Below, in pieces: positions 3,058-61,713 of a DNA stretch of 64,000 nucleotides. A program made the translations under genes and the position numbers. Below the pieces are notes generated by a model. The model ran no database searches. It was not told the DNA's origin and saw only the letters and a list, made by a program, of their open reading frames with translations. Numbering within the stretch: position 1 is the first letter of the stretch; each line of letters begins with the position of its first letter. The stretch is from Isurus oxyrinchus (Eukaryota): the NCBI GenBank assembly GCA_026770705.1, contig JANJGN010000009.1:164300001-164364000 (forward strand), written 5' to 3'.

Positions 3058-3259
3058 AAGAAAAATAGAAATGAGGTGAAATATAAGCTGGTTGAGGGGG
3101 GTGGGACAGGTAGAGCTGGATAAAGGGCCGGTGATAGGTGGAGGCAAAGAAGAGATTGCCAAAGATGTCACAGACAAAAGGACAAAGAGATGTTGACGGT
3201 GGTGATATTATCTAAGGAATGTGCTAATAGGTGACATTAAGGGTAGAAAGCAGGACGAG

Positions 3260-20152: not shown

Positions 20153-21350
20153 CTGTTACGGACAGGAGAAAGACAGGCAAACTGTACTTACTTTCTCTCA
20201 TCAACTACCCAGAAGCAGAAAGTGTTTTGAGTTATTTTTAAATTATGCAGTGGCAAGTTTTGCTAAATCCGCAGTTTGTGTGATCCTATTTACTAATAAC
20301 TCACAGCAAACTCACGTTATGATTAACTCAGAAGGTTGGTTTATTCCACATTCAAAACCAGGGGAGGAGCGTTTGCAANNNNNNNNNNNNNNNNNNNNNN
20401 NNNNNNNNNNNNNNNNNNNNNNNNNNNNNNNNNNNNNNNNNNNNNNNNNNNNNNNNNNNNNNNNNNNNNNNNNNNNNNNNNNNNNNNNNNNNNNNNNNNN
20501 NNNNNNNNNNNNNNNNNNNNNNNNNNNNNNNNNNAATAAAGAGCTTCACAGCTATGGATAGTAACAGTACAAGAACCACAGAAATTAATATTAGTTCATG
20601 TGATTTCTAGGATCTGTTAAGTCAAAAGTCCAGAGTGTGTGCTTCCTTCGTGGCTGAGTTCAGTCTCAATGAGTTTCTGGATGGGAGACAACAACACCAA
20701 AACCCTCGAAACAGATGGTGCTGCAACACAATGGGCTTTCTGTGCTTAGACCACTTGGCAGGCATTAATCAGACACTTTTAAAATCAAACGCGTTTCATG
20801 GAGTTAAGAGATGGTAACCGACTGCTTGCTCAGCTGGACTGCTAGAGTCCTTTCCAGTTGATGTTAAAACAGCAGTCTGCCTGTGAGGCCAATGATGGAA
20901 TGTTAAAACTGTCCAAAAGGCCTGAGGCTTAGATCATGTGACAGGCCCCATTAATGGTCAATTGCAGCTTAAAAATCAATTTCTGTGCCTCTGGCCAGAA
21001 TTCCATTGTTCCTCCTTGGGAGAGAGACTCTCCTACTCTTGCAATAGTTCAGGTTGGGGGGCCAGTTCATCTGTACTTCTTCTGCTTGTATTGGTTATAA
21101 TGGGTCATTACAATGAGGTGTGAGATTCCACAGGTTGAGAGAGGAAATATTTTGTTCCAACAACTCCTGCAGTAGCTCCCGGAACAAAGCATCGGTCCTG
21201 TGGTCATGTGACTTGTGGCGATCATCTTTTTTTTCAACAGAAAGTCCATTTTTTTTAAACATGGCAAAAGAATAAGGTTTTGGATTCCTTTTCATGTCAT
21301 ATGGACAAACAGTGACTATTTGATTCATGAATGGGGTATTGACAAAGGCA
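20153..21350. mobile_element. Probable LTR-type repeat spanning the assembly gap
   Basis: Starts TGTTACG; non-coding; boundaries uncertain. Confidence 0.3.
20379..20534. other. Assembly gap (156 N)
   Basis: Run of N. Confidence 1.
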
Positions 21351-22276: not shown

Positions 22277-23175
22277 GGGCTGGATTTTCTCCTAATTGGG
22301 GTGACTCAGGAGCCCTTTAAAAATTGTAGCGGATTGCAACTCTAGGGTTTCCAATTTTTGGGGGTGCCTTTTAGGAGTGCCGACTAGCTCAGGCCCCGAG
22401 GGCACACCCTGCACTCCTGGCTCCAGATGTTTTAATACACTAATGGATGAATGGGCTCTCAGCCAGGAATACAGGATAAGGCTTGGCAGAGAGCCCATCA
22501 GCCTGTCGAAACACAAGAGCCCAAGGACAAACATTGCTTGATTAATGTTCCTAGCTCAGTAATTTATTTTACCTGCACAAGCTAAAAAGGTTTCAAGTGT
22601 TTGCAGTTTCTGCTATTGAAACTTAAAGGGGCTTCGATAATTTCCACTTTAATTTGACTGTAGTAAAAATGAGTTTTACTTAAGGAAGTGGAAAGATGTC
22701 AATGAATATCTTATTTAAAAGCTTATTTTGCAATCTTACTGTCACCATCATTTCTTCTACAAAGTGTATATTGAATGAATGGGCTTGGAAGTGCCATAGC
22801 TTGGCATGTGGGCATGAGGGGCCATACGGAACATGTGGGGGAGGGGAGGGTATGAAATGGCATGGATGGAGCATGGGGAATGAGTGAGGGTGAGGGCGTT
22901 TGAGGGGTGAGGGCGTTTGAGGGGTGAGGGCTGGACCGCCTTTCTGTTTTTCTTTTAACTGGGATGGTGTCCCACAGCACCGAGGCAGGCCTTTTAAACA
23001 GGACACCTCCAGATCTGGCCCCTGTGGCTGCCTCTGAACGTTTCCTGGGTCAGCTGGCCAGACTGCACCGACGATGAAAATCCCATCCTTGCTGGCACTT
23101 TCTCCTGAGGCAGCTGGGCGGAGCCAGGAATTTTCCCAACTCCCGCTACCTGTTTCAGGGATGAAAATCCAGCCC
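22277..23175. mobile_element. Harbinger-type MITE inserted in a Penelope-derived palindrome (~22200-23355)
   Basis: Perfect 13-bp TIR gggctggattttc / gaaaatccagccc; TSD AAT. Confidence 0.85.
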
Positions 23176-23396
23176 AATGAATCGAGGCAAATATGAGTCT
23201 TTATCAGGACTGTACAGCAGTTCTGAAGAAAATTCATAGTCAACTCGAAACATTAACTCTGTTGCTCCTTCCGCCGATACTTCCAGATCTGCTGAGTATT
23301 TCCAGCACTTTCCGGTTTTATTTAGATCTCTAGCGTCTGCGGTATTTACTTTTGCCAAAGAATTTTGTCATTAGCGCTTCCCCATTCCTCAAAATG

Positions 23397-23405
23397 CACT
23401 TCCTG
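23397..23405 (-). promoter_or_regulatory. ETS/PU.1-type site (CAGGAAGTG on minus) in gene 1 proximal promoter
   Basis: CACTTCCTG ~140 bp upstream of the ATG. Motif match only. Confidence 0.3.
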
Positions 23406-23543
23406 TGAACTTGAGCAGTTGAAAACAAGAATCATCCCCTTGTTTTCAGTTTCATTAGTCAATAAAGCTGAGTGAAGCAAAAATAAGGAGGGGCAGTTCC
23501 ATAGCTCTCTCTGTGATATTTGTTCAACTTTAAAACATAAAAC

Positions 23544-23583
23544 ATGGATTTGTCGTTTCATCTTTTCATGATCTCCTTCTCAG
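23544..23583 (+). CDS. Gene 1 exon 1 (signal peptide MDLSFHLFMISFS)
   Basis: aacATGG context; 40 nt ending TCAG|gtaaga. Same length, donor and 5' context as gene 2 exon 1. Confidence 0.8.
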
Positions 23584-26500
23584 GTAAGAAACAAACAATT
23601 TCTAGGAGCTTCTATGGTGAAATGAGAATTGTGTGCATTAGTGCAAGTTTTATGGAAACATTAATTAGTAGCAGATCTTTCGTCTAGAATATTTGCCTAA
23701 TTATAAGTTTGTTAATCCTCCCTATCCAATTTTCCTATAGGAAATTCAATACCCCCAGGCATAGGAACAGGAAAATCCACTGCAGCATTCCTATCAGCTG
23801 TGGCTCAATGGTGGAACAGTAGTTATGGTACCTGTGAAGGTTGTGGGTTCAAGTCCCAGTCCAGCGACTTGAGTATGTTGAACTAGAATAGCACTTCAGC
23901 TTAGTGATCAGGGCTCAGACATCCCATCTCCCCTATCAGGTGCATGTGAAAGATTTCATGGTGTTACCTTGATGTGTGATACAAAAGTAAATCATCTGGT
24001 CTTTCATTGTTATTTGTGGGATCTTGCTGCTCACACGTTGTTTGCCTCTTTAACTACTACAATGAGTATACTTGCACCAAGTTTGTTGGCTGTAAAGCAT
24101 TCTGATGTCATGAAAGATGCAAGACTTGATTTCTTTTTCCAATCATTTTAATGCACTTTAAACTATCCTTTTGTGTTTTACTTTAACATCTGTTTCAAAT
24201 AATTGAAGCCATTTTATGAATCCGTGCAGATTTATGTGTCAGCAATCTGCTGCTGAGAAAAGTCTCTCTATACTGTGACAGGAGGGTAAACACCTGTTCA
24301 TGTCATAATCTTTTTGATCATCTTTTTGCTTGCCACTGCTTCATGCACTGAACTATTATGTCCTTCAGCCTTATTGCACCAGAGCAAAAGAAACTAAATG
24401 TCAATTTTTAAAAAAGTAATAACAGCAATTAACATTTACAGGTCCCATGTACGCTCTTCCAAATGCAGAAGCGATGTTCGATATTCAGCAATGTTTGTGT
24501 CATATTATAGGAACAGTAGGAGGCCCCTTGAGCCAGTTCCAATATTAGCGAACACTTTGAATTTAAATGTGTGTATTGAGATTGGTAAACTTACTCTCCC
24601 AATTTGGTCATTCGAGTGATGTAGTTGAGGTGCTTACTGTGTCTTGCAAAGGAAGTACAGGAAGCATTCTGTATTGAAACTGTGCTCTGTATCGTGTCCT
24701 GGAGAAGGGTTATGTTTGACTTGAAACATTGGCCAGGGTTTTCCGGCCCAGCCGTGAGGGATAGGGCGAGCCAATCAAGTGCCCGTTGACTTCGATGGGA
24801 GATCCCGCCGGCGGGAGGGGCTGGGAAAATTCCGCCCATTAGCCTCGTTTCTCTCCCCGTAGATGCTGCGGACCTGCTGAGTCTTTCCAGCACTTTCTGT
24901 TTTCATTTCAATGAGATCGTGGCTGACCTATGACCTAACTTCATACGCCTGCTTTTGGCCTATTTCCGTGAATAGGTTTGGTTGATAAAAATCTATCAAA
25001 CTCAGACCTAAAATTAGTAATGACCAGGTATCAACTTCCATTGCGCAAGAGAGTTCCAAATCGTGTGTAGATGTACAAGAGGTGTTTCCTTCATTTCACT
25101 CTTGGAAGGGCAGACTCTAGTTTTGAAACTATCTCCCCTATAGACTGCCAACCATGGAAATAGCTGCTCTCTACCTACCCTATCTAATCCCCTTAACATC
25201 TTGAAAATTCCAGTAAAATCACCCCTTAACCTTCTAAATTCCAATGAATACAACCTCTCTGCGTGAATAATCTCCCCACTTAATCCAGTCCTTGGAATCC
25301 CTATTTACACAAGGGCAGCTGAATTTCAATCCAGCATGTTTTTTTGGTGCTCCTTTGCGAGACACGTTGGCCTGGATTTTCACTGAGTCAAGTTGACTGA
25401 GGAGCCCTTGGAAAAATGGCAGGCGGGTCCCGATTCCAGGATTCCCGACCCCACTCCCAGGCTGTGCGATTCTTGGGGGTGTTTTTAAAGGATGCGGGTT
25501 GCTTCCTGTCAGAAGCACGTGTCCTGGTCAGCTCCGTTGCGGAGGTAGTCATGTCCCGGTCCTCTGCAGTTTTCATGGAGCCGGGCCAGGTTTTTAAAGT
25601 GATTCACGGGCCTGTGAGTGGATTCCTGAACCATAGGGGAGAATGTTCCACACCTGCCCACCACTGCCATCTTCCGGACCCACCACAAGGCAACGGATTT
25701 CTGGCCGCGGCACTGCCTTGCCCATAGCTTGAGGTGATCTTTTAAAATGTAAGTTCAAGAGGTTCCCCTCATGGCTCCTACACCAAGTTATGCCCCCACT
25801 AACCCCCTCAGGGCCCTCTTGCCTCCTATCCCAAGCTCTGCCCTGAGGGGTTGGGTGGAAGGTGAGGGAACATAGGGGTGAGTCATGAACATGGGGTCAT
25901 GAGATGGCATTGATGGGACATAGAACCATAGAATCATAGAACCATAGAACACTAAAGCACAGAAAACAGGCCATTCAGCCCTTCTAGTATGTGCCGAAAT
26001 ATTATTCCAATTGTCCCATTGAACTGCACCCAGTCCATAACCCTCCAGACCTCTCCCATTCATGTATCTATCCAATTTATTTTCTGTGGAGTGTTTGGAG
26101 GATGAAGGAGATAAGAAAAGGGAGGGGGGGGGGGCAACGGAGGGGAGGGCCTTTGTGTATTTTTTCACTGGGACAAAGTCCCATGGCACCGAGGTAGGCC
26201 TTTTAAAAAGCCCCTCCCCTGCGGCTCCGAACCTTTTTCCAGGTCAGCTAACCCGACTCCAGCCAGCATCCACCTCCCAGCATTGAGGATCCTGCCTGGG
26301 CTGGGCACGTCCTCCTAAGACAGGCGGGCAGATCAGGAATATTTCCCCGACTCCCATTATCCGCCTCGAGGGTGAAAATCCAGGCGTTAATACGGAAATC
26401 CCTCAAACGCCATCATTAGGACCATCAAATTGGGAGAGTGAGTTTACAAGCCTTAATGGACATTTTGAAACTTCAAGTATTCAAGGGACACTTTATGCTG

Positions 26501-29500
26501 TTAAACTGTTGCACTGATTTATTTTTATTGTATTTTACAACGTGTGTGTTATAATTTCACACTGAACAGTTACGTACGCTGCATTAAATGGACCAGATGT
26601 TATCAATGCATTAGTCGGACAATCGATCCATGTCACATGTACACATGACAAATACTACAGCAATTATCGAAAGTACTGGTGCAAAGGCAACACCCAGGAA
26701 GCCTGTGCTATTCTCATGCAAACCCACAGCCTGAGTAAGACAAATTCTGATGGCAGAATCACCATTGCAGCTGATAATGAATCAGGGGAGTTTACAGTCA
26801 CAATGGAACACTTAACTCAGGATGATGAAGGCTTGTACTGGTGTGGAATCGAAAGGCCTTTCTGGGACCTGTTAAGCCCTGTGGAACTTAAAATCACTGA
26901 AGGTAGGATCTGGATGTTTCTGTTTATTTTGGGCATTTTCAGCTGCATAGTTTCGAGTTTATAACTTTTGCAGTATGATTTAGCATATGTTCTGCAACAT
27001 TTCCAAAGCTTTGTGGTGGTAAGTTAGAATCCTGTAAAGAGGATCATGAAAAATAACAAACTGGGTTGGATTTAACAGCCCCCAACTCGCCGACTAAAAC
27101 ATCGGGGGTTGGGGGGGGGGGGGGGGGGGGTGGGGGGGGCAGCCTGCCCAGCAGAAGGCAATTGATTGGCCACTAATAAACTAGAGGTGGGATTTCCACC
27201 CCTGAAGTTCCCCCTCAGAGAGCTGCTGGCCACAGGAGGAGGTCGCAACAGGTGAGAGTTTGGCAGTCTTGCAGGTTCCCGCAAGGGGGCTTGTGGTGGT
27301 GGTGGTGGGGGGGGGCGGATGCGAGGGTATGAGAGGCCACAGGCCATGGGAGGGTGGGGGACCTGTGGTGGTGGGGGAGTAAAACTTTGGGAGGACACTG
27401 TGATGGGCCCAGAGGGCCTGTTAATGAGGGATGTCCCTGCCCAACGCCAGGCCATGCGCTTGGTGTGAGCCTTTTCCCTGCCACTGGTTAAATCCCAGTG
27501 AGGGCAGGATGAGACCCTAAGTGGACATTAAATGCCCACTAAAGGGACTCAGTTGACCCACAGGCACTGACACTACCTCCACCATTGGTAAAATTGCAGT
27601 GGGGGCAGGAGTGGGGATTGGTGTAATTTGCCTTTAAGGGATAGCAGCATGACATCACTGCCTGTGATCAGAATGTAGCACAGCTCTGATATCTTCCAAG
27701 CTTTCTACCTTTGTATAAATATTCTCATCTGCCTGTTCTCAGTAAATGAACCAACAACGTTTTTACACAATCCCTTATGAGTGATTGGTGCCTATATCAT
27801 TATAACAACACAACAGTCAGGTAGGCAGCACCCATGCCACCCACTGCATCTAAAATGCCATCCCCAAATCAATATACAGGACAGCATTAAATTCAGACCA
27901 AAATATATAATTTTAGTACTAATTCTGCTCATGAAACTTTCCATTTTTTTTCATCACAAATTTGAAGAAATTTATCTCTGTTGACTTAGACTGATGTGTA
28001 ACATAATTTGGCAGTATAATTTAATAACAATTATTTATATAATTTCTAACAGGTCCCAAAGTACTTCTATCAATCTCCCCATCAGACAAGGAAATCCTAA
28101 GGTAAATGTCATGCCTATTTAAACTGGTCTATTCTGAACATTAATTCTGTCTCTACACAATAGTGATCACACTAAAGAGAGGGCACCGAGGAGGTTTATG
28201 AGCGTGTTGCTGGGACTGAAGAATATCACAGGCAGAAGTGGAACTAAGACTGGATTACATGACACACTTCCCTTCTAGTGATGTCCTGGTGCTATCTCTT
28301 AAAGGCATATTACAACAATTCCCACTCCTGCCCCCATTGCAATTTTACCAATGGTAGTGGTATGTCAGTGCCTGTGGGTCAACTAATTCCCTTTACTGGG
28401 CATTTAATGCCCACTTAGGGTCTCATCCTGCCCTCACTGGGATTTAACCAGTGGCAGGGAAGAGGCTCACACCAAGCGCATGGCCTGGCGTTGGGCAGGG
28501 ACATCCCTCATTAACAGACCCTCTGGACCCATCACAGTGTCCTCCCAAAGTTTTACTCCCCTGCCACCACAGGTTCCTCTCCCTCTCATACCTTCACATC
28601 CCGCACCCCCCCCCCCCCCACCCCCCCAACCCCCTTGAGGGAACCTTCATGAGGAAAGATTGGTTGGGCTGGGGTTGTTTCCTTTGAACAGAGGAGGTTG
28701 AGGGGACATTTAATTGTGAGGGGGCCAGATAGAGTGGATTTCCCTCAACAGAGAGGTCAAAAACTGGGGGCATAGATTTAAAGAAATTGGTATGAGGTTT
28801 AAAGGGGAGTTTAGGATAGGTTTTTCACCAGAAGATGGTGGGGCTATGGAGCTCACTGCTGGAAAGGGTGGTGGAGGCAGAGACCTTCAATGTATTTTTA
28901 AAAATGCTTGGATATGCACTTGAGTGCCTGAACTTACAGGGCTATGCACCAAGAGCTGGAAGGTGGAATTAGGCTGGAATGCTCCTTTTTTGTGGTAGGC
29001 ACAGACGTGCTGGGCCGAAAGGCCTCCTCCTGTTCCAATTTCCTATGGGCAGAATTTTCCAGCCTCCTCCCCCTCACTGGCAGGCGGTGGGGTGGGGGCA
29101 CAATGTGGCGGGAGCTAAAAGACTGGTTTCTCATCGATGCAAAATGGCAGCAGAAATGCCCCCTCCCGCCCATCATGGTGGGGTCACCATTCCCACCAGA
29201 GGTCAGCAAGAAGCCGTTTTGCATCCCATTAATGGGATACCGATGAAGACCCGACTGGAATTGTGCCCCCCCCCGCCTCGTCCAATTTTCCACAATGCCG
29301 GGCTAACGTGTCCTGGACAATCACTGCTCACCCGGAAGGAGAGGCCATGGGGCAGCGAGCAGACAGTGGACGATGGAGATCTCCAGTGACTGTGTACCCT
29401 GGAGCACCACATGCAGCCGTGGGTGGGTGGAGCGTCAATCACGTGTATCTTCTAGCCGCAGGATCTTCCCAGCAGTGGATCTTCTCACGACAGGTGTTCG

Positions 29501-32500: not shown

Positions 32501-34801
32501 CAAGAAGGCAGCTCACCACCACCTTCTCAAGGGGCAATTAGGGATGGGCAATAAATGCTGGCCCAGCCAGCGAAGCCCACATCCCCCGAATGAATAAAGA
32601 AAAAACAATCATCAAATTGAATTTGAAAGAATTTCCAGGGCTTTTTGTTTTCTTTTGTAGATTATGGCAGCCAGCATTTACTGCCCTTCCCTAACTGGCC
32701 TTAAACTGAGTGGCTCCCCAGGCCATTTCAGAGTCAACCACACTTGCTTTGAGTCTGGATTCAAATGTAGGCCAGGCCAGGTTAGCAGATTTCCTTCCCT
32801 AAAGGGACATTAGTGAGGATAATCAATGATAGCTTCATGGTCACCACCACTGAGACTAGCTTTCAATTGCAGATTTAATGAATTGAGTTTAAATTCCACC
32901 AGCTGCTATGGTGGGAATTTGAACCCATGTCCCCAGAAGATTAACCTGGGCCTCTGGATTACTAGACTAGTGACGTTACCACTATGCCAACATATTCCCT
33001 GAATTGCTGCCTCATTTTAGTTAAAGATCTAGTTCACAGTCTCTAATGAGGCTTTCCCCACTCTTCTGCCATAACTTTGACAGGAGACTGGCAAAATCCT
33101 GAATGAAACGGTACCAGCAACCATCCCAGTGGGAGATCGGCTGCAGAAATTCCAGGCACTAAATTCCCATGGATTGAAATTTCATATCATTCGTTCATTG
33201 CTTAGCCTGGTGGAGGTCCACCCAAGCCTGATACACCCTTGAGTCCTGCGGTTTATCAAATTTTGCAAGAAATATGTTAAAGAAAGTAATTTATCTTGAT
33301 TGGGAGGCAATTTTAATCCAATGAGTCTGTCAAACAACTCATGGGATTAGGTGCAATATTGGCTTTACAACCAGCTCCCTACAGGAATTTTAATGGCCAG
33401 CGTAAACACAGTGTTCTGCCCCATCCCATGTGTTTCTTTCCCACAGCGTGAGGCTAAGATTACCCCCTTGTCTTTTTGTTACCAGTAAGTATTGTGCTTA
33501 AAACCCACCTGCAGCAGCCCACTGTCATCTTTTGTTCACAGCGCCGGTTGCATATTTAAATCAAGACATAAAAATCCATTTTAGCGAGAACAAAAAGCAG
33601 AATCCCATAGATGCTGGAATTCAGAAACAAAATCAGGAAATTTTGGAAAAGACATTACTCATTTTAACAGTTCGAAACATAGAAAAAGGGACCATAAGGA
33701 GGCCATTCAGCCCAATATGTCTGTGCTTGCCAAAAAAAGAGCATTCCAGCCTGATCCCACCTTCCACCTCTTGGTCCATGGCCCTGTAAGTTAGAGCACT
33801 TCAAGTGCATATCTAAGCAGTTATTTTAAATACAGTGAGGGCTTCAGCCTCTATCACCCATTCAAGCAGTGAGTTCCATATCCACACTAGCCGTCCTCAA
33901 CTCCCTCCTAATCCTTCTACCAATCACTTTAAATCTATGCCCCCTGGTTTTTGACCTTTCTGCTGAGGGAAATAGATCAGTCAGCATCTGTGGAGAAAAC
34001 AGACAGGGTAACATTTCAATGATAAAAACAAAAAAACTGCGGATGCTGGAAATCCAAAACAAAAACAGAATTACCTGGAAAAACTCAGCAGGTCTGACAG
34101 CATCAGCGGAGAAGAAAAGAGTTGATGTTTCGAGTCCTCATGACCCTTTGACAATTCTGTCAAAGGGTCATGAGGACTCGAAATGTCAACTCTTTTCTTC
34201 TCCGCTGATGCTGCCAGACCTGCTGAGTTTTTCCAGGTAATTCTGTTTTTGTTTAGGGTAACATTTCAGTTCTGACGAAGAGACTATATCTGAAAGGTTC
34301 ATCTCAGCTGTTCTATCCAGCACTGCTGACTGACAATTTCCTCCTTTTCTAATCAAAGCAAGTATTTTTATAGCAGGGAGAGATCAGTAGAAGCTGACTC
34401 ACGATGCTCTGCTGCCGTTAGGTTACCACATCTATTGAGAAAAGCAAATTTCATCCCTCTTGGCACAGGTTAGAACTGGGACGTAACGCACCTTCCAACT
34501 CAATGCTTTGTCCTCACTAATTTAAATGGACGGACTATCACGGGTCAAAGTGTGCGCCGGACAGTAATTAGCCAGGTGCCCAGGAGCATGAAAGTAGATA
34601 GGTTCGGCCACAAGTGTAACTAAATAAATCACACATCTAAGTTAACTCTGTGGATTCAGAAAACTATCTTGATGAAACCATTTTGTCTCCTACCTACCTA
34701 GGCAAAATAAATATCTGTACTATTTTATATGGAGCATTTTACGTTGGGCATTCTTCATCATTCTCCTCATTTGGGCCATTTTTGTCAAACTGAAAATATA
34801 G
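23544..34801 (+). CDS. Gene 1: CD300/CMRF35/pIgR-like single IgV receptor; join(23544..23583,26570..26902,28053..28101,34702..34801), 173 aa
   Basis: All introns GT-AG with matching phases (1,1,2). The spliced product is open: MDLSFHLFMISFS-VTYAALNGP...VTC...KYWCKGNTQEAC...DEGLYWCG...LKITE-GPKVLLSISPSDKEIL-RQNKYLYYFIWSILRWAFFIILLIWAIFVKLKI*. It has a signal peptide, a V domain with the extra Cx7C pair, a stalk and a TM. Confidence 0.85.
23790..24125 (+). mobile_element. Degenerate Deu-domain SINE (gene 1 intron 1)
   Basis: tRNA-like head ggttgtgggttcaagtccca; same tail as the other copies. Confidence 0.55.
24731..24837. mobile_element. 107-bp Harbinger-type MITE
   Basis: Imperfect TIR ggccagggttttcc / ggaaaattccgccc; TSD ATT; sits in a Penelope hammerhead remnant. 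Confidence 0.75.
25369..26385. mobile_element. Harbinger-type MITE containing a CR1 tail insertion (~25919-26085)
   Basis: TIR gcctggattttcac / gtgaaaatccaggc; GTT on both flanks. Confidence 0.75.
26570..26902 (+). CDS. Gene 1 exon 2 (IgV domain, CD300/pIgR type)
   Basis: 333-nt phase-1/1 exon, aacag|...G|gtagg. Motifs: VTC, KYWC-x7-C, GRITI.D, FTVTM..L...DEGLYWCG. Confidence 0.93.
27273..28646. repeat. Inverted duplication: arms 27273-27668 and 28225-28646, flanking gene 1 exon 3
   Basis: Arms are reverse complements, shown by the near-identical spurious ORFs 27215..27484(-) and 28451..28687(+). Confidence 0.92.
28053..28101 (+). CDS. Gene 1 exon 3 (stalk GPKVLLSISPSDKEILR)
   Basis: ctaacag| and AG|gtaaat; 49 nt. 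Homologous to gene 2 exon 3 (PK...DKE.LR), including the downstream intron sequence. Confidence 0.85.
28165..29046 (+). mobile_element. CR1 3' fragment interrupted by the right arm of the inverted duplication
   Basis: RRFTRMLPGL-like sequence at ~28180-28220 resumes as EERL..LGLF at ~28650; tail runs to 29046. Confidence 0.7.
29047..32058 (-). mobile_element. Non-autonomous Harbinger element with decayed Myb/SANT gene
   Basis: TIR gggcagaattttcc / ggaaaattcctccc; TSD TAT. Minus-strand remnants resemble the Myb gene of the 48318-52750 element. Confidence 0.78.
34019..34254. mobile_element. Palindromic Penelope insertion (97-bp arms 34057-34153 / 34158-34254) with 14-bp TSD
   Basis: Near-perfect inverted arms with a 4-nt loop; agggtaacatttca at 34005-34018 and 34255-34268. 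Confidence 0.88.
34702..34801 (+). CDS. Gene 1 exon 4 (transmembrane, intramembrane Arg, stop)
   Basis: Pyrimidine tract plus tag| acceptor. In phase 2 it reads QNKYLYYFIWSILRWAFFIILLIWAIFVKLKI*. Confidence 0.85.
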
Positions 34802-34989
34802 GTGATTAAAAACTGGTAAGTTGTTGATTTGAATCATTTCTGTGCATTTAAGTTTAAGCACAACACATTTGGAGGGATTCCTTATAATCTGCTTATTATA
34901 TTTCAGAAAGGATAGCAGAACCATGACAATATATTTCTGAAGTAAACGTGCACTCATTTTGTCTTGTATTGAGATCATTTTTTGAGGGG

Positions 34990-36795
34990 ACTTTTTATTG
35001 ACATTGATGCTAAAAGGTTAGTTAAGGAAAAAGTGGGACCTATCAGAGATGAAGATGGAAACTTGTGTGTAGATGCAGAGGCTGTGGGAAGGGTTTTGAA
35101 TGAATATTTCGTCACCGTGTTTACAAAGGAAAGGGAGGATGTAGATATAGTAGTCCAGGAGGAACACTGCGAGATATTAGATGGGTTAGTCATAAAGAGA
35201 GAGGAAGTACTCGAAGGGCTGAAATGCTTGAAAGTTGATAAGTCACCAGGGCCAGATGGATTGTTTCCAAGGCTGCTGAAGGAAGTCAGGGAGGAGATAG
35301 CAGATGCTCTGAGGATGATTTTCCAATCTTCACTAGATACAGGGGAGGTACCGGAGGACTGGAGAAATGCAAACGTAGTTCCATTGTTTAAAAAGGGATC
35401 TAAGGACATGCCAAACAATTATAGGCCAGTTAGTCTTTGTGAGCAAATTAGTAGAATCAATCCTGAGAGATAGGATTATCTGTCATGTGGAAAGGCATGG
35501 ACTAGTCAGGGATGGTCAGCACGGATTTGTTAAAGGAAAGTCTTGCCTCACAAATTTGATTGAATTCTTTGAGGAAGTGACAAGAAGGGTTGATGAAGGT
35601 AGTGCAGTGGATGTTGTGTACATGGATTTTAGCAAGGCATTTGACAAAGTCCCACATGGCAGATTGGTCAGGAAAGTAAAAGCCCATGGGATTCAGGGTA
35701 ATGTGGCAAATTGGATAAAAGGTTGGCTTTGTAACAGGAAACAAAGGTAATGGTTGATGGATGCCCTTGCGAATAGAATGTTGACTCAAGTGGTGTTCCA
35801 CAGGGCGTGGTGTTGGGACCCTTGCTGTTTGTGTTATGTATTAATGATTTGGACATGAACGTGGAGGGCACGATTGGGAAATTTGCAGATGACACAAAGA
35901 TTGGCCAAGTAGTTGATAGTGTAGAGGATAGCCATAATCTCCAAACTTATATAGATGGGTTGGTGGAGTGGGCGGTAAAGTGGCAGATGGATTTTAACAT
36001 AGAGAAGTGTGAAGTCATACATTTAGGGAGATCAAACAGTTACAGGGATTACATAATAAATGGGAATATACTAAGAGGGGTAGATGAAGTGAGAGATCTT
36101 GGCGTACAAGTACACAGGTCCCTGACGGCAGCAGTTCAAGTAAACAAGGTTGTAAAGAAGGCATATGGAAAGCTCTCCTTCACTGGCAGAGGTATAGAAT
36201 ATAAAAGTAAGGATATAATGTTGGAATTGTATAAAACACTGGTGAGGCCACAACTGGAGTATTGTGTGCAGTTCTGGTCACCACATTACAGGAAGGACAT
36301 AATAGCTCTGGAGAGAGTGCAGAGGAGGTTTACAAGAATGTTGCCAGGGTTAGAAAAGTGGAGCTACGAGGAAAGATTGGATAGGTTGGGGTTATTTTCC
36401 TTAGAACAAAGAAGGCTGAGAGGTGATTTGATTGAGGTATACAAAATTATGAGGGGAATAGATAGAGTGGACAGGATCAAATTGTTTCTCTTGGTGGAGA
36501 ATTCTAGATTCAAGATAAGTGGCAGAAGCTGTAGGGGGACATGAAGAAGAACTTTTTTACGCAGAGGGTGGTGGGTGTCTGGAATTTGCTGCCCAAGTTG
36601 GTGCTAGAGGCAGAAGATTTAAACTCTTTTAAAAAGTACCTGGAACTGCACCTTAAGTGCTGTAAGCCGCAGGTCTATGGGCCGGGTGCTGGAAGGTGGG
36701 ATTAGAAAAGGCACCTGGGTGTCCTCGGGCTGGCATGGACAAGATGGGCTGAATGGCCTCCTCCTGTACTGTAACTTTTCTAATGTTCTATGGTT
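34990..36795 (+). mobile_element. 5'-truncated CR1 LINE (RT domain, frameshifted)
   Basis: KSPGPDG, DWRNANVVPLFKKG, NYRPVSL, QHGFVKGKSCLTNL, DFSKAFDKVPH, KFADDTK, RPQLEYCVQFWSP. Confidence 0.95.
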
Positions 36796-39700
36796 AAGCA
36801 GCTTTCAGGTGAAAGGTAGATACAGTCAGCATTTATTTACTGAATCTTCTAAATGTGCTGTACTTTATATTCAGAATATTAAGTGCATTAACATTTTACC
36901 AAAGTAGAATGATTACTACAAAACATACATTTAAACATACCCCAAAACACAATGGGGAGAGTTTCAACTTGGGAATAAATGTGAGTGGGTTTGGTACAGC
37001 TGATTAAAAGGGGCAATACTGGCGATGCATCAAGAAAATGGGGACAACCCCCAAACTTCCACCTTTAACTTCAGCGCGTTTTGTTGTGTGTGGCGAACTC
37101 TACCATGGGGCAGTAGAGTGGCAATTTTAATACCCAAAGATCTCATTTTCAGCTGTTTTAACTGGGATTTCTGAATTTAACTGCGTGCGCACATGTTTCA
37201 CAAAACTTGCCAAGGATATGAAAGTAAGAGGACAGCGGAATTGGAGGGGACGGAACAAGTGACGGGCTGGAAATCCTTTGAATACTGAGATCTCACACCT
37301 GTTTTCATGGCCAGTTGAAAGCCTTTGACTCACAGGCCTGTTCTGAAAGTGTGCTTTCACAGTGCTAGTGGGCAGTGTGCATGGTCCTGTGACGGTACAT
37401 CCCCAGAGTGAGTGGCCCTCTCTGAGGGTTCTCCTTCCTCTTCCTGCACCACATCCTATCTCCAGTCATCTGGAGGCCCCTGAATCTCCATCTCCGAGGG
37501 TAAGGCACACTGAGGATCAGCTTATTTCCTTATCTGAAGCTGTCAGTATGCAGATGGCTGGAGGGTCACCTCCGGTTTTCTGTCTCTCCCTGGGGTTCGG
37601 TGCTGTCTTCTCCTGCAAGGAGGAAACTAAAAGATGTATGAAAAATGGAATGTGCATATGAGCATTTGAATTAGGAGCAGGAGTAGGCCACTCGGCCCCT
37701 CCAGCCTGCTCCATCATTCAATAAGATCATGGCTGATCTGAATGTAACCTCAACCCCACATTCCTGCCTACCCCCGATAACAAGTCACCCCCTTTGTTAA
37801 TCAAGAATCTATCCAGCTCTGCCTTAAAAATATTCAAAGACTCTGCTTCCACCATCTTTTGAGGAATAGAGTTCCAAAGACCCTCAACCCCCCAAGAGAT
37901 AAAAGTTTATCCTCATCTGTCTTAAATGAGTGACCCCTTATTTTTAAACAGTGACCCTGTTGTAAGGGTGGCTGAGTTGTACTATTAATGATAGAGTTGA
38001 GCTGCAGACACTTCTTGGGCGGAAACATTAAGTTTATTTACAACATACTCAGCAGCAACCACACATGTGCTTTCAACTCCAACTCTATCTCTACATCATC
38101 TGCTGAGGTAGCCCGCGCTACTCTCTTGTTGGTTACTACAGATCATGTGGTCCTTCCTAATAATCATTATTCTTAAAGGTATATTACACACTAAATAAAA
38201 CCATCATTACTACCTTCGTCCCCCTTTAAATTTGTCTACATATATTTACAAGTACATATTTTTCAAGGCAGTAGAATATTTACATTGGGTAAGGAATTTA
38301 CAAGTTCAGTCTTTCAGGTGGTTTCCTGGTACGTGTGGAACGTCGCAGCTCCACAGCTTCAGATTCTTTGTCAGGAACCTCCTTTTCTTGAGTTGCCTGA
38401 ACATCAGGTGCTTCGATGGGCACTCGCAGGTCTGTATCCTTCAACTCTTACAGGAGCATCAGACATGCCAATCCTCAACAGGAAATGCAGACCCGGTCAC
38501 GGTTACTGGTTGAACCAAATCTTGGTGATTTGTCTCTTTCCTCTTTAAATGGTCCACATGTTTACAGAGGATCTGGCCTTCCACCACCATGTGGTAATTT
38601 AGAGGTCCAGTCACCGCACTTATTTCACCCAGTAACCACTTTGATCCTTCCCCGAAGTTTATCACGTATACCAATTCTCCCATGGTAAATTTCCTCTCAC
38701 GACTACGCCAGTCGTATGTAGTTTTCTGGCTTCCCTGACTCCTTTCCACCTTCTCCTCTAAATTTGGTATTATTCAGCTCAATCTCGTCCTGAGACAGCA
38801 TTTCAACAATAATTCCACACCATGTGACACCTGCTGTTGTGTGAGGGGTGGTCCTGTAATGAGAAAGAAAGTGTGCTAGCTTGGTTGCCAGGGAATCACC
38901 AGTTAGCTTTCTCATGCCTGCCTTGAACGTTTGATTGGCCCTTTCAGCCAGTCCGTTTGAGGAAGGGTGGGGACGGTGCAGTTTTCACATGAGTGATATC
39001 GTTGAGGCTGATAAACCGTTGAAACTCAGCACTCATAAATGCCATGCCGTTATCAGAAACGACTACTTCTGATGGTCCATGAATGGCAAAACTCTGATGT
39101 AGTTTCTCAATTGTAGCAGAAGACATTGGTGACTTCACCTCATATACATCCAACCACCTTGAATGGACTTCAGCAATGAGCAGAAACATTGTTCCCAGGA
39201 AAGGTCCAACATAGTCAATGTGTAACCACACCCAGGGTCTATCTGGCCACTCCCATGGGTGTAACAGAGCTGTCACTGGCAACTTTTGCAGTTGCTGACA
39301 TTGCCCACAATTCTTTACCAAACTCTCTATTTCGCCATCCATCCTTGGCCACCATAAACAGCTGCATGCAATGGTCTTCATTCAGGAAATTCCTGGATGG
39401 GCACTGTGTAGTTCAATTAAAAGTGGCCGCCCTCCCTTTGGAGGAACTATCACTCGTGCTCCCCACAATAAGATACCATCCTGGCTGGTTATTTCATGTC
39501 TTCTGTTGAAGTACGGTTTCATTTAATCAAATACGGGCTCCTGTGACCAACCATGTAGCACTTGTTCTCGTACTTGAAGTAGGGCCGGGTCCCAACTTGT
39601 CCAGTCTCTGGTGTGTTGAGCACATACTGGTGAGGAATCTAAGAAATTTAACAGTAAAACAAGTCCCTGTGGAACTGGGATGTGCTCATCATTTTCTTAC

Positions 39701-39799
39701 AAAGGCAAATGTCTAAGGGCGTCGGCGTTTGCGATTTGATTGCCAGGCCTATGTATGAAAGTGTATTCATACGCTGCCAGGATTAAGGCCCTATTATAT

Positions 39800-40398
39800 T
39801 TCTGTATCTTCTTTTTACGTGTCTTCTTCTTTCTAGCACAGACTTTAATCTCGGCCTCCTTTTTGACTTCACTGTTGGCCAGACTTCTCTCAGATGCCAG
39901 CTCAACTTGCCTGAGCTCAGTAGCTGAGTCCCCCAAACTTTCATTATCTGTCTGCTTCTTGGAAAATTCTGCAACTTTTGCTACCAAAGCCTCTCTGGCT
40001 CCATTTAGCTGATTCTTCACCTCTTCCGTCTTGTTTTTGTTTTTTTTTGCTGCCTCCTGGAAAATTGAGCATCGTTGTGTCTTCTCTGCCAACTCATCCT
40101 TCAGTTTGTTCAGGGAAGTGCTGAATTCTCTCTGTTCTCTTCATACTTTTCCAGTGGTATAAACTTTGACCTGAGGGAATCTTGTCGTGTGTGAAGGTCT
40201 TTCAGCAGGTTTTCTGATTCCCTGCGAAGGTTGTTCACTTCGTCGCGAACTCTGTCGTCAAGCAGGGTCCCTTCGAGTTCCTTCTGCTGTTCTTCCAGGT
40301 TTTGGCTTAAGACAGCCTGCGTTTCTTCAGGCTGTTGAGTCCTTACACACTCCTTTTCCAAAACAAGAACGCTTCCAGCTTCCTTTTGGAATCCCAGT
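39800..40398 (-). pseudogene. Captured host coiled-coil coding fragment (UACA/RAI14/ANKRD24-like) replacing Gypsy RT
   Basis: E/K-rich heptad peptide LKDLHTRQDSLRSKFIPLEKYEE..EFSTSLNKLKDELAEKTQRC..EAAKKNK (one frameshift) between protease and the RNase H C-terminus; no RT motifs. UACA resemblance is from memory. Confidence 0.6.
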
Positions 40399-41796
40399 GG
40401 CCAATCAAGGTTGATTTCCCTTAGCCAATTTCACCCTAGAAGGCTTGGTCCTCTGCCTCTCAATACTAACACTGGTAGCTTTGCCGATTGGCTTCCATAA
40501 TGGATAGTTAGTCTGCTATTGCCTTGTACTTGAATGTCTTCACCCGTATATGTTTTTAGCTTGGCAGCTTGTTCTAAGTTTAACTGATGTTCACCATTAT
40601 TCAAATATCTGAAAGTATGTTTCCCAATTACTGTAGTGGAAGCTCCTTTGTTCACTTCCATTCTAACAGGTCTGCCATTTACTTTCACTGTGTGACAGAT
40701 ATACGTTCTGTCTTTCTACCTTTCAGATTAAACAACGAATAAATGTCAGCATTTGCTGGTCCAGGCTCTTCTACATTGTAGATTTCATTGGGCTTCTTCT
40801 TTTGTTTACAAGCCTACTTGAGTATTTCCTCGCACTGCCTCTTCGTATGTCCATTTCTGTGACAATAGTAGCATTCGATTTTTTTTAAACTGCCAATTGC
40901 TAAAAGATGGATTGCTTCCACCTCTATCAAAATGATTTTTCAATCTCACTGCTAAGTTATTTTCTTTTATTCTTCAGCTAGCGGGAGCTGTTTCCCACTT
41001 CTCGCCAGAGTCTCACTTTCTCGCATCTCTTTCGGCTGAGGTTTCCCACCTGATCTGGAGGACGGCGCCATTTGGCACACCCTGCGTTGCTTTTGAATCT
41101 CTTACTGCGCGTTCCATGGCCAGTGCTAGCTCTAGCACCTTCTTAAAATCCAGATTCACTTCAGACAGTAATTCTTTTCTGAATAGCGTCCTCTTTCACA
41201 CCACGCACTAAATGATCTCTAAGTATGTCGTTCACAGTCATACCGAACTCACAATGTTCCATTAACTGCTTCAACGTTTCCATGTAGCATGCAATTGTCT
41301 CAGCCGGGGCTCTATTTCACAAATTAAACCTAAACCTCTGCATCATGGCTGAGGGCTTGGGTTGAAACTGACTCTTCACGAGGTCCAGCAATCCATCGAA
41401 ATTCTTAGAATCTGGGGCACTGGGTACCATCAAATTTTGAATCAAACCATGGGTGTTGGTCCCATAAATACTCAAGAGGATCACTCGCCTCTTCTGTTCC
41501 CCTGTAATCTCGTTTGCTTGAAAAAAGAACGTGAGGTGTTCTACGTATTGAGATCAATCATCTGTGGCTAGTTCAAAAGGATCAGTTCCCCCAAATTGTG
41601 GCATTTCAAGAGAGGGTAACTTCTTCAATGCTAACAGAGTTTGCTGCTTACAATCACTGGGCAAGGTACAGTGCTGACTTCTTTCTAACTTGATTTCTTC
41701 TGTTGAATCCTATCCAGTCCTCATCGCCAGTTTGTTGTAAGGGTGGTCCAGTTATACTATTAGTAATAGAGTTGACATATCCTGGGTGGAAACATT

Positions 41797-60100: not shown

Positions 60101-61713
60101 GTGCTAAAGATTTAGTGCATAAGGCAGATCGCCTCACTCTAATTTGGGGCTATTAGTTTTGTTGCCCCCCCCCCCCCACCTCCAGTGCTTTTCAAAATTA
60201 AACTGGAGAAACAGCAGGATCAAGGAAATCAAATGGAGCCTCATTTTAGCACTCGCGCTAAGAGTCGATCATGTACCTAACAATACGTTCAATGCCCTTG
60301 CAGCATTCCTCTAACACAAGAACTCTCACTATCATGAACTTTCCACTTTTAGCCCCAGGGGCAAACTCTAATCTCTTGCTACTTTCCTCATACCTTGCCC
60401 CATTCTCGAAAAATATGGGTTCACTGCTCTACCATCTAGCCTCTCACTCCTACTGAAATTTATGCCACCTGTTTCGGTCTCATTCATATATGTTGCATCA
60501 GTTGCATAGGTTTTGGGCATATTTTCAACTCTGGACCCATTACAACTTCAATTGGTCCAGAATGCGATTTTGGATCCCAGGACAAACTCTACCCCCAGAT
60601 GTTCCAACGAGGCCCCTACCCACAGCTTCTTTGAAATCCATGTGCAATTTGGAATCTCCCAGTCGCCCTCTCCCCACCAATGTCTGATCCAAATCCCCTT
60701 CGCCAACCCAGTACATTTATGTTTCTTGCTGTGCCTTTCCCACTAAACATGTGAAAGAAACAGAACTTGGTAAACTGCTAACAAACACGTAGATACGAGG
60801 GGCAATACTGAAGCCAGAGGGTGTTAGTGAACAAAAAACAGACAACTACTGGCAAAACAATGAGGGAGCCAGTCAGAGAGAATAAAGGAGTGAAAAGCCA
60901 ACAAAGAGCCAAAGGTCCCAGGAAAAACAAATGAGTGGAACGCTTAAGAGAGAAAGGAACAAATTTTAATTTTTTTATGCTTCTGTGAAATGTTTAACTT
61001 TAAAGTTTATTATATTTTCACACTTACAGTCGCGCACGCTTCAATACACGGGCCAAGCTCAAAAGATGCCACAGTGGGAGAATCATTCGAACTCACATGC
61101 AATTTCGACACATCTTATCACGATTATCAGAAGTATTGGTGCAGAGGCTACTACCAGAGGAGCTGTAATGTTTTAGTACAAACCCAAGGCTCTGAAAGGA
61201 AAAGCCAAGACGGCAGAATAAAAGTGAGAGCTGATAATGTAAAAGGAGAACTTAGGGTATATATGGAGCAAATAACAGAAAACGATAAGGGGTGGTACTG
61301 GTGTGGAATAGCAAGAAACCACAATCTGGATCTACTAAGTCCCATAAAACTTAACGTTGTTCAAGGTAGGACACAAATATATGTTTATTTGCGTGTATAT
61401 ATTTAATGATATATTTATATTATACAACAGGTTTATATAATTTGATGCAGACCTTGGTACATATTTTCAAAATCTCCAAGATCCTGATTTCTCAGTCAGG
61501 TGTTAAAATTTTGTTAAAAAGCTAGGACAATATTGTAAAACTACGTGCTATGTTTTGATCATTCTACGAAATGCAGAATTTCAATCAGCAATCCCTGCAA
61601 ATGTATCTTGATAATGAATCTGTAACATGAGGCTAGTAAATTATCAAATAATATTTTTGTACATCATTTTGAACAGCTCCAAAGTCACTTACTATGGACA
61701 AGGAAAGACTAAG
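54150..61713 (+). CDS. Gene 2: CD300/CMRF35/pIgR-like paralogue, partial; join(54150..54189,61030..61365,61677..61713); TM exon presumably beyond window
   Basis: Same exon phases and near-identical exon sizes as gene 1. Product: MGFTLLLSVAFLS-VAHASIHGP...LTC...KYWCRGYYQRSC...DKGWYWCG...LLSPIKLNVVQ-APKSLTMDKERLR. Confidence 0.85.
55930..56460 (+). mobile_element. RTE-clade LINE 3' fragment
   Basis: LSQANLPS.E.LI...QLQWAG..IRM....L.KQLF.SEL, the typical RTE C-terminal region. Confidence 0.75.
56865..58810 (+). mobile_element. 5'-truncated CR1 LINE (gene 2 intron 1)
   Basis: ORF 57453..58142 carries RT motifs; RPHLEYCVQFWSP; tail ttctatgtttc. Confidence 0.95.
59000..60040 (+). mobile_element. 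Older CR1 LINE fragment
   Basis: ISKFANDT, WQMQFNAE.WEVIHF. Confidence 0.8.
61030..61365 (+). CDS. Gene 2 exon 2 (IgV domain)
   Basis: 336-nt phase-1/1 exon, ttacag|...G|gtagg. KYWC-x7-C and DKGWYWCG; lies inside ORF 60990..61406. Confidence 0.93.
61677..61713 (+). CDS. Gene 2 exon 3 (stalk APKSLTMDKERLR)
   Basis: gaacag| and AG|gtaaat; homologous to gene 1 exon 3. Confidence 0.82.

What the first reader, a model, noticed from the sequence alone, without database searches (positions are those of the whole stretch)
27273..28646. Inverted duplication loops out a frame-changing stalk exon: possible membrane-to-soluble receptor switch
Seen: two ~400-bp reverse-complement arms (27273-27668 in intron 2, 28225-28646 in intron 3) enclose a ~556-nt loop holding the 49-nt exon 3. 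Both arms contain the same MITE/LTR-like junction and the right arm interrupts a CR1 relic, so this looks like a local inverted copy rather than two independent insertions. Exon 3 is phase 1 to 2, so skipping it reads the TM exon in another frame (..ITE-GKINICTILYGAFYVGHSSSFSSFGPFLSN*, stop 34791-34793) and removes the Arg-TM. Known: paired intronic inverted repeats promote exon skipping or back-splicing and are ADAR substrates. Inference: gene 1 could make a secreted decoy IgV isoform. Gene 2 has no such arms.
Basis: partly seen in the sequence, partly recalled or inferred. Interest (0 to 1): 0.8.

Follow-up and report, generated by a model that had tools for sequence, protein, structure and literature searches.

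The report
Inverted duplication brackets shark receptor micro-exon
A real pair of about 390-base inverted repeats, most likely a local inverted copy, encloses a 49-base exon of a shark immune-receptor gene; skipping that exon gives an anchor-less protein that is annotated in basking shark, but nothing yet shows that the repeats cause the skipping.

Summary
Arms 27267-27659 and 28277-28652 are reverse-complementary (344 matches, 30 mismatches, 21 gap columns) and are the only such pair in the window. They enclose the 49-nt exon 3 (28053-28101).

The gene is a single-IgV, Arg-in-TM receptor of the CD300/CMRF35-like (skate MDIR) kind.

A local inverted copy is the best reading:
- The arm core has only tens of copies per genome.
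- Both arms carry the same junction with a high-copy repeat terminus.
- The right arm sits cleanly in a CR1 relic, with no target-site duplication and with TCA microhomology.
- Contigs of a related species, about 2% diverged, show three of the four junctions.

The predicted skipped product exists as an annotation. Basking shark isoform X2 (154 aa) ends in exactly this alternative frame (28/29 residues). Ten other elasmobranch species have only the TM form annotated.

In this species' own spliced RNA contigs, exon 3 is included, and no skipped form was seen. Contigs cannot show minor isoforms.

That the repeats cause the skipping, and that the product acts as a decoy, are both untested. The mechanism (flanking inverted repeats) and the outcome (soluble splice forms of TREM-type receptors) are already known kinds. 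Interest is moderate.

The parts
23544..23583 (+). Gene 1 exon 1, coding part (MDLSFHLFMISFS plus 1 nt), with donor CAG|GTAAGA.
   Evidence: tblastn with the N-terminus of the basking shark protein gives 12/13 identity. The X8 contig depth in bin 23401-23600 (3.71) equals 8.16 x 91/200.
26570..26902 (+). Gene 1 exon 2: a V-set Ig domain with four cysteines, phase 1 to 1.
   Evidence: Pfam V-set, E 2.3e-16. It is 90% identical to Cetorhinus CMRF35-like molecule 2. Spliced contigs in X5 and X8 cover it with no differences.
27267..27659 (+). Left arm in intron 2, probably the source copy. The low-copy core runs to 27617. From 27618 a high-copy LTR-like repeat starts and continues to about 27791.
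   Evidence: for the arm. Depth step and joints.
27660..28276 (+). The 617-nt loop between the arms, which holds exon 3.
28053..28101 (+). Gene 1 exon 3: a 49-nt stalk micro-exon (PKVLLSISPSDKEIL), phase 1 to 2. The acceptor is purine- and A/T-rich; the donor AAG|GTAAAT is strong.
   Evidence: It matches basking shark X1 at 13/15 residues. A paralogous 37-nt exon lies in gene 2. Depth fits its presence in the mRNA contigs.
28122..28228 (+). Left part of the CR1 relic, from the C-terminal region of the reverse transcriptase. It ends at ...GAATATCA.
   Evidence: Alignment to the CR1 at 36252 onward and the CR1 family consensus from loose ends.
28229..28652 (-). Right arm in intron 3, an inverted copy inserted into the CR1 relic. 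Contiguous homology to the left arm runs 28277-28652. The segment 28229-28276 carries 43 nt that the left arm has lost.
28649..29047 (+). Right part of the CR1 relic. It resumes at ATGAGGAAAGATTGG.
34702..34816 (+). Gene 1 exon 4, the Arg-TM exon. The normal stop is at 34799-34801 and the skipped-frame stop at 34791-34793. A possible donor CTG|GTAAGT lies at 34816/34817.
61030..61365 (+). Gene 2 IgV exon, a paralogue 45% identical at the protein level.
61677..61713 (+). Gene 2 stalk micro-exon, 37 nt, also phase 1 to 2. Its intron 2 is 311 nt and has no arms.

Best explanation
Gene 1 encodes a 173-aa activating-type receptor of the CD300/CMRF35-like (skate MDIR) kind. It has a signal peptide, one V-set Ig domain, a 16-residue stalk from a 49-nt micro-exon, an Arg-containing TM helix and a 4-residue tail.

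**Origin of the repeat.** In a shark lineage, after the split from gene 2, about 420 bp of intron 2 was copied in reverse into a CR1 relic in intron 3. The copied piece was a low-copy repeat core plus the start of a high-copy LTR-like repeat. The likely route was microhomology-guided templated repair. This produced an inverted repeat around exon 3.

**Proposed effect on splicing.** The right arm is transcribed about 175 nt after exon 3. That is roughly 6 kb before exon 4 is made. The arms can then form a duplex of about 350 bp, which closes exon 3 and its weak acceptor into a 617-nt loop. I infer that this raises the share of exon 2 to exon 4 splicing. That splice shifts the frame, replaces the stalk and Arg-TM with a 30-residue non-TM tail, and ends 8 nt before the normal stop. 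The product would therefore be a signal-peptide-bearing IgV protein without an anchor.

**Status of each step.**
- Shown: the repeat, the gene model and exon 3 inclusion as the assembled form in this species.
- Shown by annotation only: the skipped product in basking shark.
- Inferred: the causal role of the arms, secretion and any decoy function.
For: **The repeat is real and can pair.**
- It is real and unique in the window.
- In the minimum-free-energy fold of 27267-28652, 352 of 526 pairs are arm to arm. Cofolding the two arms gives -708 kcal/mol, against -266 for the two arms folded separately and about -297 with a shuffled right arm.
- No other long inverted pair spans exon 3.

**Local copy.**
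- Raw DNA reads and a relative's contigs put the arm core at tens of copies. A sharp high-copy repeat terminus lies at 28317/8, and the same junction lies in the left arm at 27618.
- The chance that a family member has another member within 1.4 kb is 2e-5 to 9e-5 for 30-100 copies.
- The right arm splits the CR1 between ...TTTCA and ATGAGG. There is no target-site duplication, and TCA is shared with the left-arm flank.
- Contigs of a roughly 2% diverged relative show three of the four junctions (records 21-24).

**Gene.**
- V-set domain.
- Orthologues are named CMRF35-like molecule and MDIR.

**Skipped product.**
- Cetorhinus maximus X2 (154 aa) matches the alternative frame of exon 4 at 28/29 residues. 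X1 (173 aa) matches the normal frame at 31/32 and exon 3 at 13/15.
- Ten other elasmobranch species have only the TM form annotated.

**Splice sites.** The stretch upstream of the exon 3 acceptor is 62% pyrimidine, against 76% for exon 4.

**Known mechanism.** Paired intronic inverted Alus shape exon choice and back-splicing (PMC11263572).
Against: - In this species' two RNA-type contig sets, exon 3 is included. The exon 2 piece stops at 26900, as expected when AG is shared with the exon 3 acceptor. The depth in bin 28001-28200 is 13 in X5 and 2.12 in X8, against 11.4 and 2.0 expected for a 49-nt exon at contig depth. The X8 contig ends 1 nt after exon 3. No skipped junction was seen.
- A 49-nt exon with a weak acceptor ahead of a 6.6 kb intron may be skipped without any repeat.
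- An annotated isoform is a model, not a measured protein.
- The isoform annotations of the eleven species depend on how deeply each was sequenced for RNA.
- Copy numbers come from summed depths, which the tool warns are rough.
Confidence: 0.45

Rival explanations
1. The inverted repeat is a bystander. Exon 3 is skipped now and then because it is a 49-nt micro-exon with a weak acceptor, followed by a 6.6 kb intron and a strong exon 4 acceptor. The skipped transcript is low-level splicing noise that an annotation pipeline picked up, and its product has no function.
For: The pyrimidine fraction upstream of the acceptor is 0.62 for exon 3 and 0.76 for exon 4. Exon 3 is included in the assembled transcripts of both RNA-type runs. 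The alternative-frame tail is short, and its two differences from basking shark give no signal of selection.
Against: Gene 2 and the other elasmobranch orthologues have the same kind of micro-exon, yet only the basking shark has the skipped form annotated. The 390-bp arms are by far the strongest long-range pairing in the pre-mRNA.
Confidence: 0.4
2. The two arms are independent insertions of one transposable-element family in opposite orientation, not a local duplication.
For: The arm core is repeated elsewhere in the genome, at tens of copies, and its inner end is a high-copy repeat. The arms differ by 8% substitutions plus indels, which is typical of old family members.
Against: With tens of copies, the chance of a second copy within 1.4 kb is about 1e-5 to 1e-4. 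Both arms start at the same outer point. The right arm stops inside the high-copy repeat at a TCA shared with its CR1 target and has no target-site duplication. No other copy lies in the 64 kb window.
Confidence: 0.1
3. The arms drive back-splicing of exon 3 into a circular RNA rather than linear skipping.
For: Flanking inverted repeats are the classic driver of back-splicing (one search list; PMC11263572).
Against: From my own knowledge, not tested here: a 49-nt single-exon circle is far below the usual size of exonic circles. No 'goes back' joint at exon 3 appeared among the joints shown, but 531 joints were not listed.
Confidence: 0.04
4. The inverted repeat is an assembly artefact.
For: The best DNA holders may be the source sample itself.
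Against: The arms differ at 30 positions and by 21 gap columns. Contigs of another species carry the left outer, right inner and right outer junctions (records 21, 23, 24).
Confidence: 0.01

Closest known systems
CD300/CMRF35-like molecules of mammals and the modular domain immune-type receptors (MDIR) of the clearnose skate
   Same: One V-set Ig domain with four cysteines, a short stalk, a TM helix with a basic residue and a very short tail, which is the activating type. The best database relatives carry these names. MDIRs are described as resembling CD300, TREM/TLT and pIgR (PMC3031540).
   Different: This is a shark orthologue. Nothing is known here about its ligand or adaptor. Pairing with a DAP12- or FcR-gamma-like adaptor is inferred from the TM arginine alone.
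Soluble splice forms of TREM-family and related Ig receptors (sTREM-1, sTREM-2, TLT-1)
   Same: A membrane receptor and an anchor-less form from one gene by alternative splicing, with the soluble form thought to neutralise ligand (PMC3031540).
   Different: Here the TM exon is kept but read out of frame after a 49-nt stalk exon is skipped. The soluble form is known only as an annotated model in basking shark.
Inverted Alu pairs in flanking introns (IRAlus) that shape exon choice and circular RNA formation in primates
   Same: Two reverse-complementary intronic repeats of a few hundred bases on either side of an exon, able to form a long duplex (PMC11263572).
   Different: The arms are not two members of an abundant SINE family. 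They are most likely one local inverted copy of a low-copy repeat junction. The effect on splicing is untested, and the enclosed exon is too small for a typical circle.

Membership tests
CD300/CMRF35-like (MDIR) activating receptor | A single extracellular V-set Ig domain | tested here: met
   Pfam PF07686, E 2.3e-16, over residues 10-110 of the exon 2 translation.
CD300/CMRF35-like (MDIR) activating receptor | A second cysteine pair in the V domain besides the canonical pair | tested here: met
   Exon 2 has four cysteines: VTC, WCK, EAC and YWCG. That this pattern marks the CD300/pIgR-type V domain is my own knowledge.
CD300/CMRF35-like (MDIR) activating receptor | A TM helix with a basic residue and a short tail without ITIM | tested here: met
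   The exon 4 translation is QNKYLYYFIWSILRWAFFIILLIWAIFVKLKI followed by a stop. Its best 19-residue hydropathy window scores 2.3.
CD300/CMRF35-like (MDIR) activating receptor | Sequence relatives carry the family name | tested here: met
   Twelve hits at E 4e-64 to 2e-12 are named CMRF35-like molecule 2, 3, 5 or 7, plus skate MDIR.
CD300/CMRF35-like (MDIR) activating receptor | Association with an ITAM adaptor and activating signalling | not testable with these tools
   Inferred from the TM arginine only.
Inverted-repeat-driven exon skipping | Complementary repeats in the introns on both sides of the exon | tested here: met
   Arms 27267-27659 in intron 2 and 28277-28652 in intron 3.
Inverted-repeat-driven exon skipping | The arms pair with each other rather than locally | tested here: met
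   Tested in silico only. There are 352 arm-to-arm pairs in the minimum-free-energy fold. Cofolding gives -708 kcal/mol against -266 for the arms folded apart.
Inverted-repeat-driven exon skipping | A skipped transcript exists | tested here: inconclusive
   It is annotated in basking shark as X2. It was not seen in this species' contigs, which carry exon 3 and cannot show minor forms.
Inverted-repeat-driven exon skipping | Skipping depends on the repeats | not testable with these tools
   This needs a minigene or a comparison of loci with and without arms. The basking shark locus could not be fetched.
Local inverted duplication by templated repair | The copy shares end points and an internal repeat junction with a nearby source, lacks a target-site duplication and shows junction microhomology | tested here: met
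   Both arms start at the same outer point, AGGTTCCC. The same repeat terminus lies at 27618 and 28318. The insert sits between CR1 ...TATCA and ATGAGG, with TCA shared with the source.
Local inverted duplication by templated repair | The arms are each other's closest relatives among all family members | not tested
   This needs the genome. Only depth-based copy number was available.

The most novel reading that the evidence does not exclude
A lineage-specific inverted duplication created a structure-dependent splice switch in a shark activating CD300/MDIR-like receptor. When the arms pair, the stalk micro-exon is looped out and the cell makes an anchor-less IgV protein that competes for ligand. 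When the duplex is unwound or edited, for example by helicases or ADAR induced during infection, the Arg-TM receptor is made. The receptor-to-decoy ratio would then be set by double-stranded RNA handling.
Probability: 0.12. Interest if true: 0.6.

Novelty: new member of a known kind. Interest (0 to 1): 0.35.

Why it matters
If the arms do drive skipping, this would be a datable case outside mammals. A single local inverted duplication, rather than a pair of abundant SINEs, would have given an innate immune receptor a soluble isoform. The case is well suited to testing. One lineage carries the arms, many relatives do not, and a paralogue 34 kb away lacks them. It would also put soluble/activating receptor pairs made by splicing in cartilaginous fish. 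If the arms are bystanders, the locus is an ordinary repeat-rich intron around a skippable micro-exon.

Tried and rejected
- **tRNA and Rfam scans of the arms.** They gave no tRNA and only a chance-level lncRNA match, E 0.78. There is no sign of a SINE head or a known RNA.
- **First estimate of the CR1 target.** By alignment to the CR1 copy at 36.3 kb, I read a roughly 25-nt deletion or a long duplication at the right-arm site. The CR1 family consensus from loose ends showed that the insert is clean, with 0-3 nt lost.
- **Extension of arm homology.** Extending it into 27660-27725 and 28220-28276 gave only a weak, gapped alignment. The left flank against CR1 scored within the shuffle range: 34, against a shuffle mean of 26 and maximum of 42. 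I make no claim from it.
- **LTR reading.** The high-copy inner repeat could be an LTR: a purine-rich tract sits just before a TG start at 27618. There is no second LTR or target-site duplication to test this, so it stays an inference.
- **Metagenome scan.** A scan for a 30-mer shared by both arms found nothing.
- **Earlier findings.** Look-ups by sequence and by words were blank. The one note nearby concerns a Gypsy provirus at 39.8 kb and does not bear on this.
- **Editing.** The RNA-type runs show no A-to-G excess over the stretch (A>G 39 against G>A 53 in X8). These are contigs laid at 80% likeness, so this says nothing about ADAR.
- **Joined models.** Exons were compared one at a time. 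Both deciding windows lie wholly inside exon 4.
Full report
**1. The observation**

The repeat finder on 26500-29500 reports two adjoining inverted pairs. They are 27301-27572/28363-28634 (272 nt, 88%) and 27574-27659/28277-28362 (86 nt, 90%). blastn joins them into 27267-27659 against 28652-28277, 87% over 395 columns, E 2e-137. Neither arm has another copy in the 64 kb window. A global alignment gives 344 matches, 30 mismatches (15 transitions, 15 transversions) and 21 gap columns, with perfect runs of up to 55 nt. Homology starts and stops sharply. The repeat is real and far beyond chance.

**2. The gene**

- Exon 2 (26570-26902) is a V-set Ig domain (Pfam E 2.3e-16).
- Exon 3 (28053-28101) is 49 nt and runs from phase 1 to phase 2.
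- Exon 4 starts at 34702. In the normal frame it reads QNKYLYYFIWSILRWAFFIILLIWAIFVKLKI, with the stop at 34799-34801.
- Exon 1 was found at 23544-23583 (MDLSFHLFMISFS) by the N-terminus of the basking shark protein.

The word search with exon 2 alone returns 12 relatives. They are named CMRF35-like molecule 2, 3, 5 or 7 in sharks and rays, plus the skate modular domain immune-type receptor. The best is Cetorhinus maximus at 90% identity. All of them share the stalk plus the Arg-TM. MDIRs are described as resembling CD300, TREM/TLT and pIgR (PMC3031540).

The window's organism is therefore probably a lamniform shark or a close relative. This is an inference from identity levels.

Gene 2 has an IgV exon at 61030-61365 and a 37-nt stalk exon at 61677-61713. 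It is a 45%-identical paralogue with a 311-nt intron 2 and no arms. Gene 1's intron 2 is 1150 nt.

**3. What the arms are**

The single read-laying run covered 23001-29000 at 80% likeness. It used two RNA-type contig runs, one raw-read DNA run of the same species and one contig run of a related species.

*Copy number in the raw DNA run.* About 4% of the run was read.

| Region | Summed depth |
|---|---|
| Unique bins | about 0-0.6 |
| Arm core, 27201-27600 | 5-11 |
| Arm core, 28401-28600 | about 39, part of it spill from the poly-C tract at 28600-28634 |
| Inner ends, 27601-27800 | about 267 |
| Inner ends, 28201-28400 | about 404 |
| CR1 tail, 28601-28800 | about 1380 |

*Copy number in the relative's contigs.* Single-copy bins sum to about 20-26. 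The arm core sums to about 590-1370 and the inner ends to about 39000-45000. The arm core is therefore a repeat of some tens of copies, and its inner end belongs to a repeat of the order of a thousand copies. The tool warns that summed depths are rough.

*A repeat terminus inside the arms.* The high-copy piece is laid as 28226-28318. After 28317, 373 contigs run on into unrelated sequence (loose-end agreement 0.35). A repeat terminus therefore lies inside the right arm at 28317/8, and by homology inside the left arm at 27618. In other genomic copies this repeat continues as the reverse strand of 27791-27697 (joints 27697/28226 and 27743/28232, 'opposite strands'). The left locus therefore carries more of it than the right. 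A purine-rich tract immediately before a TG start at 27618 would suit the 3' end of an LTR element's inner region followed by its LTR. That is an inference only.

**4. Local copy or two insertions**

- With 30-100 family members in 3-5 Gb, the chance that a member has another within 1.4 kb is 2e-5 to 9e-5. Even with 2000 members it is about 1e-3.
- Both arms begin at the same outer point, AGGTTCCC.
- The right arm lies inside a CR1 relic. Its left part, 28122-28228, aligns to the reverse-transcriptase C-terminal region of the CR1 at 36.3 kb. Its right part resumes at 28649.
- CR1-family contigs that match from 28649 have ...GAGAATTTCAGCT before it (loose ends). The relic's left part ends ...GAATATCA. 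The insert therefore sits between TTTCA and ATGAGG, with at most 3 nt lost and no target-site duplication.
- The TCA at that point is also present in the left arm's flank (GATCACAGGCAG on the reverse strand).

This pattern fits a microhomology-guided, templated copy of 27270-27667 into a break in the CR1. The left arm later lost 43 nt, which family members and the right arm retain, and the right arm has a 17-nt gap relative to the left. It does not fit transposition. I put the local inverted copy at about 0.85.

**5. Age and reality**

Contigs of the related species are about 2% diverged. Records 21-24 show, for example, 26 differences in 1246 nt and 11 in 469 nt.

- One runs from exon 2 into the left arm (to 27299).
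- One covers the left core (27460-27608, 3 differences).
- One runs from the loop through exon 3 and across the right inner junction (27787-28255).
- One runs from the right arm into the CR1 (28536-28977).

Three of the four junctions are thus seen in another species. This rules out an assembly artefact and places the event before that split. The 8% substitution difference between the arms is about 3.6 times the divergence between the two species. This suggests that the event also predates the split from basking shark. That is an inference, and it ignores gene conversion.

**6. Would the arms pair**

In the minimum-free-energy fold of 27267-28652, 352 of 526 pairs are arm to arm. Cofolding the arms gives -708 kcal/mol. 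The arms folded separately give -162 and -104. With a shuffled right arm the value is about -297.

Within 23.4-36 kb the only other inverted pairs are two inside intron 3 and one 61-nt pair, intron 1 against intron 3. The right arm begins 175 nt after the exon 3 donor, and exon 4 lies 6.6 kb further on. The duplex could therefore form long before exon 4 exists.

The pyrimidine fraction upstream of the acceptor is 0.62 for exon 3 and 0.76 for exon 4. The exon 3 donor is near consensus.

**7. Is the exon skipped**

Compared exon by exon:

| Window translation | Basking shark product | Identity |
|---|---|---|
| Alternative frame of exon 4 (34704-34790) | C-terminus of CMRF35-like molecule 2 isoform X2 (XP_078402492.1, 154 aa) | 28/29 |
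| Normal frame of exon 4 | Isoform X1 (XP_078402491.1, 173 aa) | 31/32 |
| Exon 3 | Isoform X1 | 13/15 |

X2 reads ...LKITE-GKINICTILYGASYVGHSSSFSSFGPFLSN.

In ten other species only the 172-175-aa TM form is on record. They are Mustelus asterias, Heterodontus francisci, Heptranchias perlo, two Chiloscyllium species, Hemiscyllium ocellatum, Hemitrygon akajei, Hypanus sabinus and two Mobula species. The one 156-aa entry is a truncated TM form. The skipped form is thus annotated only in the lineage nearest the window's organism. This is suggestive.

**8. This species' own RNA**

Runs X5 and X8 are labelled only as a guess at RNA. They do contain spliced contigs that cover exon 2 exactly and with no differences. 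The X5 contig is 1622 nt, with exon 2 at 125-458. The X8 contig is 477 nt, with exon 2 at 92-425.

Three observations indicate that exon 3 follows exon 2 in these contigs:

- The exon 2 piece stops at 26900. This is expected when the last AG is shared with the exon 3 acceptor. A skipped contig would match through 26903.
- Depth in bin 28001-28200 has no repeat signal in DNA. It is 13 in X5 and 2.12 in X8, against 11.4 and 2.0 expected for 49 nt at contig depths of 46.5 and 8.16.
- The X8 contig has 52 nt after position 425, which is 2 + 49 + 1.

The joint itself was not among the rows shown (531 were unlisted). No skipped form was seen. Contigs drop rare variants, so this bounds nothing beyond 'inclusion is the main form'.

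**9. Consequence of skipping**

- The skipped tail's best 19-residue Kyte-Doolittle window scores 0.96, against 2.3 for the Arg-TM. Both windows lie within exon 4.
- Both stops lie in exon 4, within 25 nt of a possible last donor at 34816. Nonsense-mediated decay is therefore not expected, by the usual 50-55-nt rule (my own knowledge).
- The product would keep the signal peptide and the IgV domain. Secretion and decoy action are inferences.
- Intronic inverted Alu pairs are known to shape exon choice and back-splicing (PMC11263572).

**10. Verdict**

The local inverted duplication is well supported. The predicted isoform is real at the level of a related species' annotation. The causal link to the repeat and the decoy role remain open. 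Both the mechanism and the outcome belong to known kinds, so I file this as a new member of a known kind, of moderate interest. Its merit is that it is unusually testable: a lineage with the arms, many without, and a paralogue without.

Noticed in passing
window 23401-23600 and 26570-26902 (records 3 and 11): The X8 mRNA contig's 91 nt upstream of exon 2 lie on exon 1 near 23493-23583. The X5 contig's 124 nt upstream of exon 2 are laid nowhere in 23001-26566 (depth 0 there). X5 may carry a different first exon from outside the stretch, or a chimeric contig.
   Followed up: no
window 28101-28102 (record 11): The X8 contig ends 1 nt after exon 3. A graph branch at that point would fit two continuations that both begin with G: exon 4 and retained intron 3, or another exon.
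   Followed up: no
window 34054-34257: A 204-nt self-complementary element (94%) in intron 3, about 450 nt before the exon 4 acceptor. Related copies lie at 2917-3106 and 5468-5574. It looks like a foldback or MITE-type repeat.
   Followed up: partly
window 34982-36544: A CR1-type LINE with long reverse-transcriptase reading frames lies directly downstream of the TM exon on the same strand. It may be part of the 3' UTR, since the X5 contig has about 1.1 kb after exon 3.
   Followed up: no
window 27104-27139 and 28600-28634: Long G and C runs lie upstream of the left arm and inside the right arm's outer end. They draw thousands of low-complexity reads and form a second, short inverted pair (I3). 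The left arm's counterpart of the right arm's C run is GGTGGTGG-rich.
   Followed up: partly
window 38400-40400: Integrase-like and other retroelement reading frames lie on the minus strand. Another note of the scan calls this a Gypsy provirus with a captured host segment. It is unrelated to the arms by blastn.
   Followed up: no
window 20379-20534: A run of 156 N in the region upstream of gene 1. It was left untouched.
   Followed up: no
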